Assembly (NCBI GenBank): GCA_001179505.1
Contig: CDMY01000336.1
Location: 124,001-188,000 of the forward strand
DNA: 64,000 nt
DNA from: Vitrella brassicaformis CCMP3155
Taxonomy: Eukaryota; Protista; Chromerida
Reading direction: 5' to 3'
The notes beneath the pieces are model-generated. The model was not told where the DNA came from. It saw nothing but the letters and a program-made list of their open reading frames with translations, and searched no databases. Made by a program: the position numbers and the translations under genes. Below, piece by piece: positions 49,253 through 59,890 of this stretch; within the stretch, counting starts at the first letter, position 1, and every line of letters starts with the position of its first letter.

Positions 49253-49538
49253 TTCAGCTTAACCGGCCCCCAACGGCGTCTCAGGCGGGGGTGAGTGGGG
49301 GCCTGGTGTTCGTCTGACGCTCGGATGTGCGGGGGCTGAAGCAGCAGCGCATGCGGTTGCGACACACGGCTGCAGCGGGGGGAACTTTGGTTCCGAGGAA
49401 GGAGGGCCTGAGCCTGGGTTATCGAAAACAATTGGTACGCAATGAATGGCACACTGCGTGAGAAACGGGGTATCATGTCCGTATGTATGTGATGTGGCTG
49501 TGCTGCGAGTCATGCATGCAGGTGGCTAGAAGGCCGTG

Positions 49539-51278
49539 ATGAGTGAGGCGGGCGCAGCTCTGCCCCTCGACTGGGTCGAACACAGCAGGGACAACGTTGC
49601 CGTCAGTCTTCCAAGTATGTCACTGGCTGCGGGCATCCTCTCGCGCACTTTCACTCGACCCCAGCAGGTGACGGAGCTCATTCGACAGCAGGGAGCCGAC
49701 CCCAATGCGCAGCCCCAGCTACGGATGGAGGGCACCACGGGAGGCTTCACACCCTATCCGCTGCTGTCCCTGTGCATCGGCAACCTCACCGACAACCGCA
49801 TCCCGTCCATCTGGGCAGCAGACGGCGATGATGAGGAGCCTCCCGTCGCTTTGCCGCAGTGGTCGTCACCCGACCTGCAGGAGGCCATCATGAAAGCACT
49901 CATCGAGGGAGGTGCGGACATCAACGCCATCCCGACCAACGAGGCGGGTGTGGACTGCCCGGGTACCACGCCCGTCCGTGTGGCCATCAAAGCCTGCAAC
50001 GAGAAGGCCTTCCGTCTGCTCATGGCGCAAGGTGGGCTGCTGCTAGGGGGCCGTAAGGTGATGCTGCTGCCATGGACACTGGACACGGACCGGCCCACCG
50101 AGGACCACGAGGCCACCCTGCTGTCCTTCTACCAGCAACTCATCCGCCGCGACCCCACCCTCGCAACCGAGACTGCTGCGCGGTATGCCGGCAATCCGCT
50201 GCATTGGGCGGCCGCCACCGATCTCGTATGGTCGCAGTCTTTCATCGACAGCTACATCGACCTGTTGGTGGCCAATGGGGCGGACATGACGGCAGTGGAC
50301 ATCAACGACTGGACGCCATTGGACTGCGCGGCAATATGGGGGGACCACCGTGCGGCTGCCTCCCTGTGCCGCCGCCTCTCGTCTGCCGACATCAACAGAG
50401 GGACCCCCAATGACCCCAATGACACGCCTCTCACTGCTGCTGCCTGGATGCTCGATGACAAGACTCAGCTGCTGGACGACGACACTGCGGAGGAGGCAGA
50501 CAAGGATCAAGCCAGAGCCCGGATTCCCCATCTCAAGAGCACCATCCGTGTCCTGCTGCAGGCGGGGGCCGACATCGCCCGGCTGCCCACGGGCACCGAG
50601 GGGCACCGCCGTCGTCGGCGTCTGGTGCTGCCCGAATACAAGATGGTGCTCAACGAGGTGCCCGACGTGGTCGTGTCGGCTGTCAACGCCGCCCTGCGAC
50701 CTCAGCGCGACCACTCGATGCTGCTCGCCCGTCTGCTGCCCCTGGCGCCCCACCACGACGGCCCTTCCACCCACCCATCGCCCTCCAGCCTCTCATTCGG
50801 CCCACAGGAGGCAGAGGCCGTCGGCTGGAAGATCGGCTCCTTCCTGCACGAGCCACACACCGCCATGGCGACCATCGATGGGTACCTGATGGGCGAGTCG
50901 CTGCTGAAGCGCCGTGTCATTGCGGCCGTGGCGCATTTCGTGACGCAAGCGGCCACACGGACGACCAGCAATCGGGAGGTGGTCGGGGGGAGCCGGCACG
51001 TGCAGCACGAGGGAGACGCGGAGAGCACCAAAGTGACGGTCCCGCCCCTACAGTGCTTCGCCGTCAATGGGGGACAGCAGGGGGGCGGGCAGCATCGTGT
51101 GTTGGGTGTGCGTGAGGTGGTGCACAAGGCTCGGCTGGACGAGGCGGCCCAGCACGGCGTGGAGGGGGTGGTCAAGGGCTTCAGCACCCACCTCGGCGAT
51201 AAGGACTGCCAGTTCCAGTGGCAGCAGCTGGGGTACATCAACAGGCGGGGGCAGTTTGTGTCGCTGGGCATCAACTGA
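49539..51278 (+). CDS. Intronless ankyrin-repeat protein of the expanded Vitrella-type family
   Basis: 579-codon ORF with GADPNA, GGADINA, TTPVRVA, NPLHWAA, NGADMTAVDINDWTPLDCAA and DTPLTAAA ankyrin motifs. Confidence 0.88.
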   Translation: MSEAGAALPLDWVEHSRDNVAVSLPSMSLAAGILSRTFTRPQQVTELIRQQGADPNAQPQLRMEGTTGGFTPYPLLSLCIGNLTDNRIPSIWAADGDDEEPPVALPQWSSPDLQEAIMKALIEGGADINAIPTNEAGVDCPGTTPVRVAIKACNEKAFRLLMAQGGLLLGGRKVMLLPWTLDTDRPTEDHEATLLSFYQQLIRRDPTLATETAARYAGNPLHWAAATDLVWSQSFIDSYIDLLVANGADMTAVDINDWTPLDCAAIWGDHRAAASLCRRLSSADINRGTPNDPNDTPLTAAAWMLDDKTQLLDDDTAEEADKDQARARIPHLKSTIRVLLQAGADIARLPTGTEGHRRRRRLVLPEYKMVLNEVPDVVVSAVNAALRPQRDHSMLLARLLPLAPHHDGPSTHPSPSSLSFGPQEAEAVGWKIGSFLHEPHTAMATIDGYLMGESLLKRRVIAAVAHFVTQAATRTTSNREVVGGSRHVQHEGDAESTKVTVPPLQCFAVNGGQQGGGQHRVLGVREVVHKARLDEAAQHGVEGVVKGFSTHLGDKDCQFQWQQLGYINRRGQFVSLGIN

Positions 51279-51995
51279 CGGCCGTGTTGCCAGTAGCTAT
51301 GTTGTTATAGGGGAAAGGGTGAGGACAGAACGGCTCCACTGTCGCGGCTCTATAACCCGTGATAATGGGCGTGATAATTTTGTTGCGTGATAATGGGTGT
51401 AAGATGTGGCGGTGAAAGACAAGTGCCCGGCTGTTTTGTTTTGAGGAGTTTCAGAATCTGAGCATGTGAGCGATAAATCTCATTGACCATACAGAACTCA
51501 AAAATGAGACGATCTGTATGATGGAACTCTGCCTCAGCTGCTGGCAAGGCAATTCATACCACACGTGTCGAAGGGGTGAAGAAGCGGATTGACTGAAGAC
51601 TGGTTTTGATACTGACCACTCATCACCAGAGTTGCGCACTGTACATGTCTCTCCCCCCTGGATGGTATGCCTCGTTTGAGGTCACCACCTCCCTTCATCT
51701 TGGAGGATATTGGGATCTGCTGAGAACGACCGACCCAGCCCATGCAAGGAGAGAGACGCATTCATGCGCTTTTCTCAGATTCAACCGACCACCCCAAGGC
51801 TCTGCTCTTGCTGTTTCCCTGACTCTCACCGTACGGCTGCACTGCCGCACGTCCGTGTGCGGTGCGACAGATAGACAGCGTAGGCTGGATGGATGAAGGC
51901 CAGTCAGGTCCAATCAAGAGGGAGCAGCAAGACGCTCCACAACCAGCCAGACAATCAGATAGCAGACATCGCGACCATCCGTGCATCCATTGGCA

Positions 51996-52044
51996 GAGGT
52001 CGCCAGCAAGTGATAGGCTGAGGTCGCCAGCAAGTGATAGGCTG
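51996..52044 (+). repeat. 24-bp perfect tandem duplication
   Basis: GAGGTCGCCAGCAAGTGATAGGCT occurs twice in succession. Confidence 0.9.
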
Positions 52045-53395
52045 CATGCAGCACTCCTCTCGCATCTCAGACAGACAGACAGACAGTACTTACGTTACTT
52101 TACGGTACCGATACAATGAAATCCACTCAGCTAGCCAGTAGCCGTCCATCCCCGTTGCCTTTTCCCTCGCCCCCTCCCCTGTAGGATAGATACGATTTGG
52201 TACGGTAGGATACGATACGATATACAGAATGCATACTTACTGACGGCTATGTATACGTACAGGTCTACGTATGAGCAATCACGGCGCAGGGACGAGTCAG
52301 TCTGACAGACAGACAGATAGTAAGTCGAGTAGGTGAATGAGTAGGAAGGGTAGTGTAGGTGAGTGGAGTCAGTCAGTCAGTGGGATGACAGCGTGGATTG
52401 CATGCAGGTCTGCATGTCTGTCTTATTTATTGCCGAGGCGGGCCGCGATTAGCGGCCCACCCCTTCAAACTCACGACAAGATTGCAAATTACACAGCACC
52501 GACCGACAGGTGGGACAAATACACACGCACCCACACGCCCACTTGATCCAAGTGAGTGCGCACTCGCACGCCCACGGGCAGAGAGAGAGAGAAAGGGAGA
52601 GATGCAGTGGTGAGGCAGAGCGCCCATGTGTCGTGCCTCCTCTCCCTCGACCCGCCCCGCCCTCATCGATGCCTTAAAACAGAAAGAAAAGTAACACAAA
52701 AATATCCATCACGAACGTGAAAGCAAAAACGAGAGACGACTAGAAATAGTGCATACATACACACAAGAGAGCGATAAGGCGCCTGGCCAGCTCAGCTCCA
52801 TCCATGTGAATCGTCGATTCAGCACAGAAGGGGTCAATCAAGCTGACCATTACCATTCGGAAGACAATTACGGAAATTCCGCTGAGAAGATAAGAGAGGA
52901 GAGGAGAGGAGAAGAGAAGATGATATAAGATAAGAGAAGAGAAGAGGCGGCAATAGATGCACGAGAGAGAAGTCCGTAGAGAGGTGGAAGCAAGCACAGT
53001 TGTCAGTCAGTCAGTCGCTTGATCAAGAGCCAAGCGACCAAAATAATAATATAATCGTCCCCTTCCCCAGTTTGCAAAGTCGGCCCGCTCTTCCCCCGCG
53101 CCACGCCACGCCACGCCACGCCATTCTTTAAAAGACAGCTTCCTTGATGCACACAGGTACGAAAGGGACGGCCAGCCACCGGTCGGTCGACACATTCTAG
53201 CCGCCTATTCTGTTGCGACACTTGTCATCAAGCCAGGCTCTGCTCTGATCCGAGCAACAGCATAGTCAGTCAGCCACTCAGCCGCTCACCCGACCCGACA
53301 ACGACAAAGTGAAAACACAGCAAATCATACAAACAAACATACAAACAAACAGGCCCACCTCCCAGCCGTGTGTAATCCATCCATTAAGTCAGCAC

Positions 53396-56300
53396 TCAGG
53401 AGGCCTTGGCCTGCGGCTCCGCCCCAATGAACCCCTCGGCCATCTGGTCGTCCTCCTTTTGCTGTTGCTGCTCCTCCTGCTGCCGTCGCGCCTTATCCTG
53501 CCCAACCACGTCACCACCCGTGTGTGCCACATGGTGACCCTGGGCCTCCGTCGGGCTGACGCCACCCAGGTATCCAGCCGTGGCCCTCGACGATACTGGC
53601 GACACACCACTCACAAACGACGCACCAGCAGGGGCAACGGCGGCGGCAGCAGCAGCAGCGGTAGATGAAGCCTCATCTACCATCTGGTTGCTGGCAACTG
53701 CGGCAGCGTGCATGTCACCCACACCGACACCGAATGCTGCCATGCCGACGGGCAGGGAAGGCGCGCCGCCGCCCACCACCCCCGTGTGTGAGTGGTCAGA
53801 CATCGCTGCCGCCTTTTCGGCGTGGTCGTCCCCATGCAGGGGCACTGAGCCGGGGCTGCTGCACGTCTGCGCAGTGGTCGACTGGCCGTCCTGACCGGCG
53901 GCACCCATCAGCTGGTCCAGAGATCCGACGGACGGGGCGGATGCCGTGGCCGCTGCTGCTGCCGCGATGCACTCCGGGGGCATGTCCTGCTCGATTGGTG
54001 GGAAGTTGGGTGCGAGGTTGGGGTCTTTGAGCGAGTGGAGGGGCGGGTAGTTGCCCCAGTTGGTGTCGTGTGTCTTCTTGCCGACGCAGGGCTTGTCGCA
54101 GAAGGACAGGTAGATCAACGGACGCCAAGATGCATCCTGTAGGGAGCACACCGAACACAGAAACGGACCAGGCCAGGGGTGTCTGGTTTGGCTTGGCTTG
54201 GTGTGGTGTGGTGGTGGGACTGCTTTCTTTGCTCACAATGTGTCGGGTGCCTCTGTGTCGCGTCAGGTTGTCCATGAGGATGACGTCGCCCATGCGAGCG
54301 CGAGAATGCACAGTGCCCCTGGCAGACCCTGAACAGCCAAACATACATACACACACACATGAATATCATCCGCAGAGATGGGGCCATCACCCACCCACCC
54401 ACCCACCCACCCAAACTCACCTGGTATCTTGAACTCGGTGCCGCTGTTGGTCTCGGTGATGTCCACCAGCGGCACAAAACCAGTCACTATGTTCCTGCAC
54501 ACAACACACACACACACACACACACACAGAGGCAAGCAGCGAACGAACATACAAACCATCCCCAGACGCCGTCAGTACACGCACACACGCACACACGAGT
54601 CCACCACATTTCAGGCCTGGCTAGGTGGTCGTCAAGCTGTCTGCAGCCAGCCGGCTGGCCGGCGTCTCAAACCTAATACTAAGGCGAGACGCGGCGGCCG
54701 GGCCGGCCACTCGACCAGTCCGATGCATTCATGTGTCATCATGCGTGGCGTGCGGGTGTGGTGTGCGCCCCGTCCACGAGTGTGTGTGTGACTGCTCTGC
54801 TCACGTGTCTAGGTCCGAGAAGTAGTCGTTGTGGTACTTCTGGTCGTGCTGGTGGGGGCCGCGGGACATGATGTAACCTGCATCACACACACATACACAT
54901 ACACATACACACAGGAGTCACCATTGCCGGTGCGTGGGTTGGTGTGTGACAGACAGAGAAGAGAGGCGCACCGAGTGTGATGCGCCGCCAGACTGAGTGG
55001 TCCTCGCTTGTCGGCCACGTCTGAAACTCACTGATGACACCACACGCATTGAAGCGTCACTGTGCTGCCCTCCTGGCCTTCATTGCCTCTCAGTCAGCTG
55101 TGAGTGTATGTATACCTCTTGATAGCTTCCATGAAGAGTTTCTCGATGCCCTTGAAGGCCGCCAGGATCTTCTCGTGAAGCGCACCCAACTCACCTACAC
55201 CCACACGAACCACCCGGATCAATCAAGAGAGCAGAGCACCATGACGGATGCCCCTGGCCTCCAGACAGCGACAGCTCCTCTGTGCGTGCGTACCGATATG
55301 TCGCGTGTGGGACAGGTTGACGTCAATCCGCCTGAGTGGTGAGAAGTGAGTGGCTGGAAAGGTGCGAGCCTGTCTGTGTATGTGTGTCTTTACCCGGTGG
55401 TGCCTCTGCACGCGATGCTGTTGTACTTGAAAGGCATGTTGACATCCGTCACTTGGCCAACACTGCACAAAGAAAGACAGACACAGACGAGTGTGGTGGT
55501 GCGTTGGATGGATGGATGCCTGCACTGCAGCACTTGGGCTGGCTCACTAGTGCAGCAGCGTGGAGAAGTGCCTGATGACAAGGTTCTGCAGGTACTGGAT
55601 GAGCGCCGTCGACACACGCTGCTGATACCACTGCACGCCATCCCTGCACACACACACACACATTGTTACGCCAGCCATGCGCTGCCTGAGTGCATTCACA
55701 CACACATGGCCATCCCTCCCTACCTGAGGAGGAAGCAGTCGGTGAGGTCTGTCTGGAAGCTGGAGCTAAAAATATGCACCGGGTTCCGCAGCGCCTGCCC
55801 ACAGGTCTCCCCCACGAACCGCTTCCGCGACAAGATCATGTCCTCGGGGCTAACGTCCGCCCACATCGAGGGGTGGATGCCCCCAAACTCCCCACCCTCA
55901 CCACGCACCCTCCCCACCTCAGCCATCTTCGTGAACACGTCCCTCTTGACTCCTGTCCGCGGCGCCGTGGGCCTCGCCCTCCCGCGCCCAGCACCGCCAT
56001 GGCCATGGCCGCCCGTGGATCGTGTGGGACTGGATCGGGGCGAAGGGGAGGTCTCCGTCTTGAGTGTGGGCATCGGCAGCGTGGGTGCGGGTGGTTGGTT
56101 GTCTGCGAAGAAGACGGCCGGCAGCTGCGGCCGGTTCGTCTCCTCCGCCCTCCTGCGCTTGCGGCGTGACCAGCCGCCCCGCAGTCGGCTGGTCTTGCCC
56201 CTGCGACTCCTGCCAGTTGTGGACGTGGCCGTGCCGTCGATGGGCGTCGTCATGGGGATGAGCTCCTTCTTGCTCGCAGCTGCGATGATCTCCTGAAACG

Positions 56301-58420
56301 GCAAACCGGCCGGGGCGCTGGGCTCCGGTGATGCGGCCATCTGGTCGGCCGGATCCTGCTCCTGCTCCTGCTGCTGCTGCTGCTGCTGGGTGTCGGGTGC
56401 GATGAAGTGGCCCTGCCCCTCCGCCTCTGGCTGCTGCTCCTGCTGGTGCTGCTGCTGCTCTGTGTCCCGGTCCATGCCTTGGTCGGGGGAAGGTTGCCGC
56501 TGCGGGACCGTGGGACTGGCGCTGCTGTTGATGATGTGGTCGATGTGGATCTGCACCGCCACATCCCACACACCAAACAGGTGGGCGCACTGCAGCAGCT
56601 GAGGGATCGACGCACGGCGCAAGTCCAGGCCCTGGAGGCCGGCCTGCTGCATCATGACGTCGGTCTCTGCCCGATGGGTCTGGCGGTGCTCGCGTATGAG
56701 CTGCAGCAGCCTCGCGCGGCCCTTGTTGCCGATTCGCAGAGTCATGCCCTGGGTGTAGGGGATGTCGCTGGGAGAGAGGTTGCAGGGCACCGACGACGAC
56801 AGCTCCTCACTGACCCGCTCCTCCCCCGCCCCTCCGCACACTTGCATGGCCTTGTCCAGCCCACAGAAGGCCGGCGGCTGCCCCTCCATGGCAACGGGGA
56901 ATGACGCACCGGGCGGGCTGGCCATTGCCGTTGCTGCATCAGTCGCCATGGGTTGTGGGGGTGGGCCCATCCATTCTGACGGCGGTGCTGGTGCCGCATC
57001 GCCCGCCTCGGAAGCAGGGTCGCTCGGGACAGGAACCGATGCAGGCGCCACCCCGCACATGCGGCCGTATGACTCACCCGGAATGCCCGACATCAGCGGC
57101 ACACCCATCGCTGTGGGAGTATTGCACGACGGCACCGCAAGCAGCTGGCTCGGGTCGTCTCCCCCCACCAGCGTGTTGCTCTCACTGCCCTCAGCCCTCG
57201 ATGGCGATTTGTCGGTCGTCGAGCGCGCTGGCGGTTTGGTGCGCTGCTTTGCCCGTGGCGGCCTATGTCGTGGCTTGGCTGGCTGTGGAACGGGCAGCTC
57301 TGCGGGCTCCTGGGGAGGTGTGGGGACCGGGGGGATGAGGGTGCCGTCGGGCATGGGCTTGCCCGTCGTGACGGCGGTGCCTCGCGCTGTGAAGTACTGC
57401 TGGCAGATCTCCATCCAGTCGGGGGACGTCTGCCACATCTGAGAGAAGAGAAGATCCACACACACAGCATCATGAGAATGAGGCAGGGAGGGACATGTGT
57501 GTGTGTGTGTGTCTGTGTGTGACCTGGAATCCTGTGAAGTTGAGGGCCTGTTTGGTGTGTTTGTTCTGCTTGACCCCTTGGTGGTTGTTGACGTATGCCG
57601 CACAGACCTCAGGAAACTGACCGAAACACCGCGTCAGCGCCAGGATGAGGGCACTGACCTGCTCCCAGTATCCCGTCCCCCACAGACACCGCACGTCGGC
57701 CACACGCTCGCCCTGCCACTCAATCACCTCCACCAGACACCCGCCCACCACATCCCTCTCCTCCCGTCCTGGCGGCTTCCTCTCCTGTTTGTGGCTGACG
57801 GCTGGGGATGGGGAGGGGTCCGTGTCGGTGTGTCGGGGGGAGGGGGACGGCGAGGGCGAGGGAGAGATGGGGGTCTCCTCCTCGAGCAGCACGATGACGC
57901 CCTCCATGTGTTCACACATCTCGGGCTTGCGCATGTCCGCAATGCTACCAAGCAGACAGACAACCATAGCACACAGAGAGGACGGACGGACAGCCGATGA
58001 ATCAATCCGTTGTTTGTTCCCCTTCTCCCTTCCTGTTCCGTCAGCCTCTTACGCGTATATGAGCTGCACCGGCACGACCCTGCCCCTCCGCTGGAGAATG
58101 GTCAGCAGCCTCTCGGCAAACTGGGGGTTAGGCGCCGGCTCGATGACGGGCAGCAGGTCGTGCTGCTTGGCCAGCCGAATCATCTTGTGGTACGCCGAGA
58201 GCAACTCCTGGTAGTCATCCGGCCGCTGGTAGGTGGCCTTCATCAGGGGGTCGGTCGCCACAAAGGCGCGAGGGGGAGCGGGCGGGGGGCCCTTGCGCTT
58301 CCTGCCGCTGCGAGTCGACGGGCCGTCGTAGTAGATGACGTCGTTCTCTGAGGTCTTGTCGCTGTCATTCTCGAGACCAGCGTAGTCCATTCTCTTCTTC
58401 TCACGCATGTGGTACGCCAT
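53396..58420 (-). CDS. Multidomain protein: GNAT-like region, Pro/Gln-rich linker, small helical domain, basic NLS-like patches, PhyH-like 2OG-Fe(II) dioxygenase
   Basis: Phase-consistent exon chain gives CFLLRDGVQW...RGTTGRID...GYIMSRGPHQHDQKYHND...IVTGFVPLVDITETNSGTEF...GDVILMDNLTRHRG...RPLIYLSF, i.e. HxD...H plus the 2OG-binding Arg. Confidence 0.82.
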
Positions 58421-58807
58421 GGTCCTCCAAGGTGGTGGTCCTCACCCCTAGGTCCTCACACCGATGGATAAGTGGAGGGCGAGAGGCAGCAAAACGGGAC
58501 ACCGGGGGGATCTTACGGTCACAGGGATGAGTCGAGGGGGGCGTGGGCTACACCGGCAGATGCCCTCTGGCCAGATGCATGAGTCGGGGGGCCGAAAGAG
58601 AGAGGGAGTTCGCTGATCTCGTCGTGAGAGTGGGGTGGGTCAACGACAGACCGGAATGACGTCCCAGACAACCCAAACGGAGCAACAGCTGCTCTGCATC
58701 GATATCAGCGCCCACATGCTTCCTCCGCCTCTCACGCAAGCTCGCAGGAGAATTTCCGCGAAAACTGTTCGCCCTAACCCAAGCATTCTTCAACGCAATC
58801 CAACTTG

Positions 58808-59890
58808 ATGGCGCTGTGGATGGTCCCCGCAATTCTTCCTGTTGCGCACGGATCTTCCTCAGTCGGCTTCATCCACCACAGCGGTCGGCCACGGCTGCAG
58901 AAGAGGTTAACAGCGCTTCAGCGTGCCAGGACCAGAAGGCGGCAGCGAGCCACCTTATCGGCGGACGAGAGCTGGGAAGGCTTCGAGTACGGCGAAACAA
59001 ACTGGTTCCTGGATGATGGCGGCTCTTCCGAGGTGGACAATGTTGCCGTATCGATGCATGACGAGCCACAGGGCTTCGATTACGAGTCAGCCGTGGAGGC
59101 GCTTTCACCTCTTGTGAGCCCAGATCGGCTGGAGCGCCTGCAGACCGTCATCAGGTGAGGGAAGGAGCTAGGCAGACATCAATCCCTGCCTCTGTGTGTG
59201 TGTGATGTGTCTGTCCATCTGCTGTCGTGCAGTCAGCGGACGAACCACTGCCAGTTCGTGTTTGAGGCGCCCACAAATCCCAACAACGTCTGGGCCTGCC
59301 TGAGGACTCTCGACTCATTCGGCATCCAGCACACGTCCGTCATCCGACGGCCGGGGGGATACGACCGCCAGAGAGACATCAACGGCAATATGAACGTCGC
59401 ACTTGGGTCCTCACAGTGGCTGAGCATGCAGGAGTTCCAGTCAGCCAGTGAGGCTATCGGCCAGCTGAAGGACCGGGGGGTGCGGGTCTACGCCTCTGAC
59501 CTGCAGGAGGACTCAACGGCCTTGACGTCGTTGGACGTTTCGCAGCCTTTTACGATTGTCCTGGGTAATGAGAGGACCGGCATCAGTGAGGAGATGCGGG
59601 GATTGGCCGACGAGACGTTCTTTGTGCCGATGCGGGGGTTCGCGGAGAGCTTCAATCTGTCTGTTGCGTGTGCCGTCACGTGTGCATATCTGTCGCAAAT
59701 GGGTGGGCTGAAGTGGGGGGACCTGAGTGAGGGGGAGAGGGCTGCGGTGATGACTGAGTGGCTGATGCGGTGTGTGCCGGGCAGCCAGCAAGTGCTCGAG
59801 AGGAAGGGCCTGCGTGTGCCTGAGAGGTTGAGAAGGACGCGGCAGAGGCTGTTGGGGTGTGAGGGCGTCAGGAAGAGACGCATAATGTGA
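58808..59890 (+). CDS. trmH: SpoU/TrmH-family RNA 2'-O-methyltransferase (tRNA Gm18-like), organellar presequence
   Basis: SPOUT motifs NPNNVWACLRTLDSFG, VLGNERTGIS and PMRGFAESFNLSVA; N-terminal signal-like plus R/S-rich segment; one intron. Confidence 0.88.

What the first reader, a model, noticed from the sequence alone, without database searches (positions are those of the whole stretch)
53396..58420. Probable nuclear GNAT-like + PhyH 2OG-Fe(II) dioxygenase: candidate new chromatin or nucleic-acid modifier
Seen: a phase-consistent exon chain rebuilds a PhyH-type dioxygenase with an intact metal triad (H-N-D at 54825-54833, distal His at 54255-54257, RPLIY Arg). The same protein carries strongly basic patches (RSGRKRKGP; RRGKTSRLRGGWSRRKRRR), a long P/Q-rich linker, and an N-terminal alpha/beta segment (VVGGCLVEV-RVADVRCLW-CAAYV-QALNFTGF) with GNAT strand order. 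Established: PhyH-family enzymes are usually small metabolic hydroxylases, while nuclear 2OG oxygenases (JmjC, TET/JBP, AlkB) modify histones or bases. Inference: this could be a lineage-specific nuclear writer/eraser combining acyl-transfer-like and oxidase domains.
Basis: partly seen in the sequence, partly recalled or inferred. Interest (0 to 1): 0.78.

Follow-up and report, generated by a model that had tools for sequence, protein, structure and literature searches.

The report
Divergent PhyH-like oxygenase fusion gene
A real, transcribed 12-exon gene of the alga Vitrella brassicaformis encodes a long, mostly disordered protein that ends in a very divergent PhyH-type iron/2-oxoglutarate oxygenase domain and carries a small helical domain shared only with apicomplexan parasites. 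The proposed acetyltransferase part and the nuclear role remain unproven.

Summary
The exon chain is real. Twelve GT-AG exons (58420-53396, minus strand) give a 1274-aa ORF. Every intron joint appears in spliced transcript contigs from public runs. The public model CEM03190.1 (Vitrella brassicaformis, 1270 aa, unnamed) matches it apart from the first 4 residues.

The C-terminal domain (aa ~790-1075) is very probably a divergent PhyH-type Fe(II)/2OG oxygenase. No single test is significant, but they agree:
- PhyH is the only Pfam hit, and it is sub-threshold.
- Protein-language-model neighbours with a family name are PhyH clusters.
- The best plasmid tblastn hit is a true PhyH protein.
- The best PDB sequence hits are kanamycin B dioxygenase (KanJ).

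These alignments place HND, the distal His and the Arg on the catalytic residues. Structure prediction of this domain failed because no alignment could be built.

The GNAT claim is untested in effect: there are only faint leads. The nuclear role rests on basic patches alone.

New here: the "linker" contains a confidently folded ~85-aa four-helix module. It is absent from Pfam and is found as tandem pairs in Cryptosporidium, gregarine and two other Vitrella proteins.

No other protein with this architecture was found. The scan also noted a PHD-PhyH fusion elsewhere in this genome; I did not check it.

Verdict: a new variant of a known enzyme kind, of moderate interest.

The parts
53396..58420 (-). 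Whole coding region: 12 exons (58420-58053, 57944-57524, 57438-55724, 55643-55548, 55462-55394, 55331-55294, 55194-55116, 55030-54972, 54877-54805, 54494-54421, 54328-54237, 54136-53396 including the stop), 1274 aa
   Evidence: Phase and GT-AG check; spliced RNA contigs; identical to public model P0001 = CEM03190.1 apart from 4 N-terminal residues
58286..58312 (-). Basic patch 1, RSGRKRKGP (aa 37-45), NLS-like
   Evidence: Sequence; function is inferred only
57373..58255 (-). N-terminal alpha/beta region (aa ~56-285, spanning exons 1-3 with a Ser/Pro-rich insert at aa ~147-180); candidate GNAT-like domain, unproven
   Evidence: Partial AF2 model, aa 185-243 at pLDDT 64-86; language-model neighbours 0.83-0.85 include GNAT clusters; VIA Z 3.7 to GNAT PseH but Z 4.2 to gelsolin; no profile hits; no homologues
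56518..56766 (-). Conserved four-helix module (aa 488-570); motif Y.EG..L.LG..GR..L ... LRNA..P.LL.MAH..GLW..AV..H.EH
   Evidence: HMMER hits to 15 clusters, E down to 6e-18, confined to this region; alignment A1 with invariant G, G, R, W; AF2 pLDDT 96-98; not in Pfam and no PDB sequence relative
56345..56466 (-). CAG/Gln-rich repeat inside exon 3, where the transcript contigs break
   Evidence: read laying lists this stretch as a skipped repeat; contigs end 39 and 20 nt inside it from either side; the ORF is uninterrupted
56149..56211 (-). Basic patch 2, RSRRGKTSRLRGGWSRRKRRR (aa 673-693), NLS-like
   Evidence: Sequence; function is inferred only
53996..55860 (-). C-terminal PhyH-like Fe(II)/2OG oxygenase domain (aa ~790-1075, end of exon 3 to exon 12); the core aligned to PhyH proteins is aa 945-1042 (54095-54984)
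   Evidence: Pfam PhyH is the only hit, E 0.19; language-model top score 0.95 with 13 of 30 neighbours in PhyH clusters; BLASTP to a true PhyH protein E 4e-7 pairwise; hhalign 76.5% probability; 0 of 2000 shuffles reach the HMM score; KanJ ranks top in PDB
54825..54833 (-). H964-N-D966, proposed Fe(II) ligands (HxD)
   Evidence: Aligned to HRD of the Cupriavidus PhyH protein
54255..54257 (-). H1022, proposed distal Fe(II) ligand (TRHRG)
   Evidence: Aligned to TLHAG of the PhyH protein and to WHRG of KanJ
54122..54124 (-). R1033 (WRPLIY), proposed 2OG C5-carboxylate binder, 11 residues after the distal His
   Evidence: Aligned to WRR of the PhyH protein and to RPL of KanJ

Best explanation
This is one expressed gene of Vitrella brassicaformis. 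It encodes a 1274-aa modular protein made of an N-terminal alpha/beta domain of uncertain fold, a conserved four-helix module, long disordered low-complexity linkers with two NLS-like basic clusters, and a C-terminal, very divergent PhyH-type Fe(II)/2-oxoglutarate oxygenase domain. The likely mechanism is as follows. H964, D966 and H1022 hold Fe(II). R1033 binds the C5 carboxylate of 2OG. Oxidative decarboxylation of 2OG then drives hydroxylation, or a related oxidation, of a substrate that is not known. The non-catalytic modules probably deliver the enzyme to a macromolecular partner or compartment, with the nucleus as the leading guess. Shown: the gene model, its transcription and splicing, conservation of the helical module, and alignment of the catalytic residues to PhyH proteins. 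Inferred: the DSBH fold, catalytic activity, substrate class and localisation.
For: Gene model.
PhyH-like domain:
- PhyH is the only Pfam family reported for the domain (E 0.19, at the HxD-to-PGS region).
- Language-model neighbours score 0.94-0.95, and every neighbour that carries a family is PhyH.
- The best hit in 7.3 Gb of plasmids is an ORF that Pfam scores as PhyH at 1.2e-27.
- Pairwise BLASTP gives E 4e-7 with HND/HRD, PGSARG/PGSHRW, TRHRG/TLHAG and WRP/WRR aligned.
- hhalign to that subfamily gives 76.5% probability, E 2.2e-5.
- The HMM score is 14.1 bits against a maximum of 4.4 in 2000 shuffles.
- The three top PDB sequence hits are kanamycin B dioxygenase, with HRG...RPL aligned.
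Helical module.
Targeting: no signal peptide, no transmembrane segment and no PTS1, and the only PTS2-like string is internal. Basic clusters are present.
Against: - No single PhyH test is significant at database scale: Pfam gives 12.4 bits against a gathering score of 22, tblastn E is 4, and PDB E is 0.6.
- The pairwise and hhalign statistics were computed on a hit chosen after the search.
- Nothing is on record in precomputed Pfam hits.
- The AF2 single-sequence model of the domain failed (pLDDT 37), so the fold is not shown.
- No homologue of the domain was found by word search or locus scans, so conservation of the catalytic residues cannot be assessed.
- The transcript contigs break in the CAG repeat, and the two halves differ about 6-fold in depth in one run. 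An additional shorter transcript is therefore not excluded.
- Nuclear targeting is only a motif-level inference.
Confidence: 0.6

Rival explanations
1. A cytosolic bifunctional small-molecule enzyme. A GNAT-like domain that binds acyl-CoA and a PhyH-type hydroxylase act on the same small metabolite or acyl-CoA, as EctA and EctD do in ectoine chemistry or PhyH does on phytanoyl-CoA. The linkers are merely lineage-typical low complexity.
For: All characterised PhyH-family members I know of act on small molecules or carrier-tethered substrates (own knowledge). The nearest solved sequence is KanJ, an aminoglycoside enzyme. Both GNAT and PhyH chemistry can involve CoA thioesters (own knowledge).
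Against: The GNAT fold is not established. A spacer of ~500 aa carrying a separately conserved helical module and two strongly basic clusters is unusual for a metabolic enzyme. No peroxisomal signal is present.
Confidence: 0.2
2. A non-catalytic scaffold. The PhyH-like domain is a degenerate remnant that kept the motif by descent but no longer turns over 2OG, and the protein works through its helical module and disordered regions.
For: The domain is extremely divergent and has no detectable close relatives. The canonical PGSH motif reads PGSA. The HxD-to-His spacing is shorter than in the aligned PhyH protein, with gaps in the alignment.
Against: All four residues needed for Fe and 2OG binding are retained in register. 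That would not be expected for long in a neutral remnant.
Confidence: 0.1
3. Two products from one locus. An internal promoter or processing site near the CAG repeat yields a shorter mRNA that encodes mainly the oxygenase half, so the N-terminal and helical modules and the oxygenase are often not on one polypeptide.
For: The contigs break at 56345-56466. Depth of the 3' contig against the 5' contigs is 42.8 to ~7 in X6 and 134 to 93 in X7.
Against: Both contigs run into the repeat from either side, and assemblers usually break at such repeats. Exon 3 is one uninterrupted 1715-nt ORF across the repeat. The public annotation joins them. Contig depth is a poor measure, as the tool's own caveat says.
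Confidence: 0.1

Closest known systems
PhyH / phytanoyl-CoA dioxygenase family (Pfam PF05721), including kanamycin B dioxygenase KanJ (PDB 6s0u, 6s0r, 7cl2) and a Cupriavidus plasmid PhyH protein (L001:1060-2025)
   Same: The HxD...H triad, an Arg 11 residues after the distal His, the N(S)G-x5-PGS segment between them, and the LG(Y/H)(I/M)M-RGP run before HxD all align. PhyH is the only Pfam family reported.
   Different: The score is below Pfam's gathering threshold. PGSH reads PGSA, and the core is shorter. The domain sits at the end of a 1274-aa multidomain protein rather than being a ~250-320-aa stand-alone enzyme. No close homologue was found anywhere.
Nuclear 2OG oxygenases (JmjC demethylases/hydroxylases, TET/JBP, AlkB)
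   Same: Same cofactor chemistry and the same general DSBH superfamily (own knowledge). These enzymes are also fused to targeting modules and carry NLS-like patches.
   Different: No sequence or profile signal to JmjC, TET/JBP or AlkB families. A nuclear role here is inference only.
GNAT acetyltransferases (Pfam Acetyltransf_1 and related families)
   Same: By eye, there is a strand-loop-helix with LWGTG where motif A (Q/R-x-x-G-x-G/A) would lie, and QALNFTGF where motif B (A..Y...GF) would lie. A partial model shows three strands then a helix. There are faint language-model and structural leads.
   Different: No GNAT profile hit even at E 10 and no PDB sequence hit. Gelsolin-like domains match the partial model as well or better. 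A 35-aa Ser/Pro insert lies inside the putative fold.
XRE/HipB/Cro-type helix-turn-helix domains
   Same: The four-helix module superposes on many XRE-family DNA-binding domains: Z 4.2-4.9 over 59-71 residues, rmsd mostly 2.5-4.8 A (one row 5.1 A).
   Different: Z is far below the level that separates true relatives from common helical arrangements, as the tool's own note says. There is no sequence similarity. Death-domain-like bundles score similarly.

Membership tests
PhyH (PF05721) Fe(II)/2OG dioxygenases | Match to the family profile at or above Pfam's gathering score (22 bits) | tested here: not met
   12.4 bits, E 0.19 on the isolated domain; nothing at E<=0.1 on the full protein; nothing on record
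PhyH (PF05721) Fe(II)/2OG dioxygenases | HxD...H facial triad in register with family members | tested here: met
   H964-N-D966 aligns to HRD and H1022 to the family His in BLASTP and hhalign with a Pfam-verified PhyH protein. The His also aligns to KanJ.
PhyH (PF05721) Fe(II)/2OG dioxygenases | Arg that binds the 2OG C5 carboxylate, ~11-12 residues after the distal His | tested here: met
   R1033 (WRP) aligns to WRR and to RPL of KanJ; the spacing is 11 residues
PhyH (PF05721) Fe(II)/2OG dioxygenases | Double-stranded beta-helix fold | tested here: inconclusive
   AF2 without an alignment gave pLDDT 37, and no homologues were available to build an alignment
PhyH (PF05721) Fe(II)/2OG dioxygenases | Fe(II)- and 2OG-dependent turnover | not testable with these tools
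   Needs a biochemical assay
GNAT N-acyltransferases | Match to a GNAT family profile | tested here: not met
   No GNAT family at E<=10 in Pfam, NCBIfam or PHROGs; no PDB sequence hit; no tblastn hit in phages or plasmids
GNAT N-acyltransferases | GNAT fold (beta1-alpha1-alpha2-beta2-4-alpha3-beta5-alpha4-beta6) | tested here: inconclusive
   Only aa 185-243 were modelled with moderate confidence (three strands plus helix). The best GNAT match is PseH at Z 3.7, while gelsolin domains reach Z 4.2. Language-model scores of 0.83-0.85 are 'lead only'.
GNAT N-acyltransferases | Acyl-CoA pyrophosphate-binding motif A (Q/R-x-x-G-x-G/A) at beta4-alpha3 | tested here: inconclusive
   C-L-W-G-T-G precedes the predicted helix. 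The G-x-G is present and the Q/R is absent. This was read by eye, not by alignment.
Nuclear chromatin/nucleic-acid-modifying 2OG oxygenases (functional class) | Nuclear localisation and a histone, DNA or RNA substrate | not testable with these tools
   Only NLS-like basic clusters and a weakly HTH-like module are available

The most novel reading that the evidence does not exclude
A chromerid-specific nuclear oxygenase. A PhyH-type Fe(II)/2OG enzyme, a family otherwise known from small-molecule chemistry, has been recruited to chromatin or nucleic acids by a four-helix, HTH-like module. That module defines an undescribed family across Apicomplexa (Cryptosporidium, gregarines) and chromerids. 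The enzyme may be paired with a GNAT-like acyl-CoA-binding domain. It would then represent a new class of protein- or nucleic-acid-modifying oxygenase, in parallel with the PHD-PhyH fusion the scan noted elsewhere in this genome.
Probability: 0.15. Interest if true: 0.75.

Novelty: new variant of a known kind. Interest (0 to 1): 0.45.

Why it matters
If the oxygenase is active and works on a macromolecule, it would extend the PhyH branch of 2OG oxygenases beyond small-molecule metabolism. It would do so in a lineage, the chromerids, that is the photosynthetic sister group of apicomplexan parasites. Separately, the four-helix module is a cleanly conserved domain without a Pfam family. It is present as tandem pairs in uncharacterised Cryptosporidium and gregarine proteins. 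Naming it and finding its ligand would annotate a set of parasite proteins that currently have no function. As it stands, the gene is a well-supported but functionally open lineage-specific fusion.

Tried and rejected
- Pfam on single exons gave nothing, and Pfam on the whole protein gave nothing.
- Word-index homology searches found no hits with exon 3, the C-terminal domain or the N-terminal domain. Each search covers only proteins of 0.55-1.75 times the query length.
- The one full HMMER search (exon 3) recovered the protein itself. Its relatives matched the mid module only, and none shared the N- or C-terminal domains.
- Locus scans with the C-terminal domain found nothing in prokaryotic genomes, viral contigs or metagenomes.
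- AF2 on the C-terminal domain without an alignment was unusable (pLDDT 37), so no fold search was run on it.
- Foldseek against PDB and the atlas shape search on the 531-aa N-terminal-plus-mid model were uninformative, because disordered parts dominate the model.
- A global hhalign run returned no alignment.
- NCBIfam and PHROGs gave nothing relevant.
- Literature searches for the accessions and for PhyH-chromatin links found nothing relevant.
- A peroxisomal reading was rejected for lack of a PTS1 or an N-terminal PTS2.
- I considered building a PhyH-family alignment around the query to force a structure prediction.
Full report
**Gene model**

On the minus strand, twelve exons run from the ATG at 58420 to the stop at 53396-53398. 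They join in phase through eleven canonical GT..AG introns and give one 3825-nt CDS of 1274 aa.

Public transcript-derived contigs laid on 53100-58800 show every joint at my coordinates, within the stated 1-4 nt ambiguity:
- 54136/54237
- 54328/[74-nt exon 10]/54805
- 54877/54972
- 55030/55116
- 55194/55294
- 55331/55394
- 55462/55548
- 55643/55724
- 57438/57524
- 57944/58053

These come from runs X6 and X7, which belong to two studies, with partial support from X1 and X2.

The contigs break only inside the CAG repeat at 56345-56466. Both enter it, by 39 and 20 nt, and exon 3 is an uninterrupted ORF across it. Depth differs between the halves (about 43 to 7 in X6, 134 to 93 in X7). An additional shorter transcript therefore cannot be excluded, but two separate genes are unlikely.

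The full HMMER search with exon 3 returned a 1270-aa protein that is 100% identical. It is CEM03190.1 / A0A0G4EXR3, an 'unnamed protein product' of Vitrella brassicaformis CCMP3155. It equals my model minus the first four residues. The organism and the gene model are therefore settled.

**C-terminal domain (aa ~790-1075)**

Taken singly, the evidence is weak:
- Pfam on the whole protein finds nothing.
- On the isolated domain the only family reported is PhyH, at E 0.19 and 12.4 bits against a gathering score of 22. The match covers the HxD-to-PGS segment.
- Nothing is on record in precomputed Pfam hits.

Four independent libraries nevertheless point to the same family:
- Language-model neighbours score 0.94-0.95. 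Thirteen of 30 lie in PhyH clusters and no other family appears.
- The best tblastn hit in 7.3 Gb of plasmids (E 4) is a Cupriavidus ORF that Pfam scores as PhyH at 1.2e-27.
- The three best PDB sequence hits (E ~0.6) are kanamycin B dioxygenase.
- Pfam itself reports PhyH.

The pairwise BLASTP to the Cupriavidus protein gives E 4e-7 for that single comparison. It aligns LGYIMSRGP/LGHMMDRGP, YHND/MHRD, TNSGTEFKIPGSARG/REN-GATLVVPGSHRW, TRHRG/TLHAG and WRP/WRR.

hhalign against six members of that subfamily gives 76.5% probability and E 2.2e-5. The subfamily HMM scores the real domain at 14.1 bits, against at most 4.4 bits for 2000 shuffles.

KanJ aligns VPLIDFTLENGSTEYW-PGS and WHRG...RPL to the same residues.

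Caveat: the comparison partner was chosen after the database search, so the single-comparison statistics overstate significance. I put the probability of a PhyH-type DSBH oxygenase with intact Fe/2OG ligands (H964, D966, H1022, R1033) at about 85%.

The fold itself could not be shown. AF2 without an alignment gave pLDDT 37, and no homologues were found to build one.

**N-terminal region (aa ~56-285)**

No homologue was found. No GNAT or other convincing profile hit appeared in Pfam, NCBIfam or PHROGs, even at E 10. There was no PDB sequence hit and no meaningful tblastn hit.

Language-model neighbours of exon 2 score only 0.83-0.85. They include two GNAT clusters, but the tool calls this 'a lead only'.

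This region was folded together with the mid module. Only aa 185-243 reached pLDDT 64-86, forming three strands followed by a helix. That is what GNAT beta2-4/alpha3 looks like. LWGTG sits where motif A would be and QALNFTGF where motif B would be, both read by eye.

The all-PDB structural comparison, however, ranks gelsolin-type domains (Z up to 4.2) above the single GNAT hit (PseH, Z 3.7). The GNAT claim is therefore open. I give it roughly 40%.

**The 'linker' holds a conserved domain**

All 15 relatives of exon 3 match only aa ~485-570, with E down to 6e-18. They come from Cryptosporidium (felis, andersoni, muris), from gregarines and related lineages (Filipodium, Platyproteum, Digyalum, Selenidium, Gregarina), from two further Vitrella proteins (CEM09056, CEM07574) and from unnamed assemblies.

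In nearly all of them the module occurs as a tandem pair, a shorter copy A and a full copy B, within a ~200-aa conserved unit. The protein studied here has one copy.

The alignment (A1) has invariant G, G, R and W, with the consensus Y.EG..L.LG..GR..L ... LRNA..P.LL.MAH..GLW..AV..H.EH.

With this alignment AF2 models four helices at pLDDT 96-98.

The module matches no Pfam family consistently and no PDB sequence. Structurally the best rows are a phage phi6 nucleocapsid protein (Z 5.7) and many XRE/HipB-type HTH domains (Z 4.2-4.9). Death-fold bundles score close behind. By the tool's own calibration, that is too weak to assign a fold family or a DNA-binding function.

**Localisation and context**

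There is no signal peptide and no transmembrane segment. The C-terminus (-KAS) is not a PTS1, and the only PTS2-like string is internal. Plastid, secretory and peroxisomal routing are therefore not indicated.

Two strongly basic clusters (aa 37-45 and 673-693) fit NLS patterns. This is the only direct support for 'nuclear'.

The neighbouring genes form no functional cluster. They are a divergent SpoU methylase, a convergent ankyrin-repeat protein, and TLD and rhodanese domain proteins.

The scan's notes list a PHD-PhyH fusion elsewhere in this genome (s1-080117). I could not retrieve or test it. It modestly raises the prior that Vitrella uses PhyH-type oxygenases in chromatin contexts.

**Verdict**

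The oxygenase assignment is probably right but rests on convergent sub-threshold evidence. GNAT and nuclear function remain hypotheses.

The architecture is unique in the libraries searched. The helical module is a genuinely undescribed conserved domain of apicomplexans and chromerids.

I rate this a new variant of a known kind, with interest 0.45.

Noticed in passing
window 55644-55660, 54878-54900, 54495-54530, 55195-55205 (intron 3' ends): Several introns of this gene end in (TG)n or TG-rich tracts directly before the acceptor AG, instead of a polypyrimidine tract (acceptor contexts GTGTGTGTGCAG, TGTGTGATGCAG, TGTTGTGTGCAG, GTGTGGGTGTAG).
   Followed up: no
window ~51240-53395: The spliced RNA contig covering the 3' half of the gene continues about 1.86 kb beyond 53100, towards the convergent ankyrin-repeat gene (ORF 49536-51278, + strand). 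This is either a very long 3' UTR or overlapping convergent transcripts merged by an unstranded assembly.
   Followed up: partly
window 54361 / 55645: In all four runs a high-depth contig joins 54361 to 55645 with TCGG in between. Both ends lie in TG-repeat intron sequence, so this is probably repeat-driven and not an isoform. Two further joints (53659-55484 and 54596-55643) have only 20-21 nt on one side.
   Followed up: no
window 59198-59890 (+): The divergent upstream neighbour is a SpoU/TrmH-type RNA methyltransferase (Pfam SpoU_methylase on the public gene model), starting about 0.4-0.8 kb from the 5' end of this gene's transcript.
   Followed up: partly
P0011 (CEM09056), P0019 (CEM07574), P0005/P0006/P0007/P0017 (Cryptosporidium): The tandem A+B form of the four-helix module defines a ~200-aa conserved unit in otherwise unannotated apicomplexan and Vitrella proteins of 320-1460 aa. 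None has any Pfam domain, and some carry acidic tracts of the kind seen in nuclear or nucleolar proteins.
   Followed up: partly
window 56345-56466: A CAG/CAA (poly-Gln/Glu) repeat inside exon 3 is where all short-read transcript assemblies break. Depth on the two sides differs about 6-fold in one run and about 1.4-fold in another.
   Followed up: no
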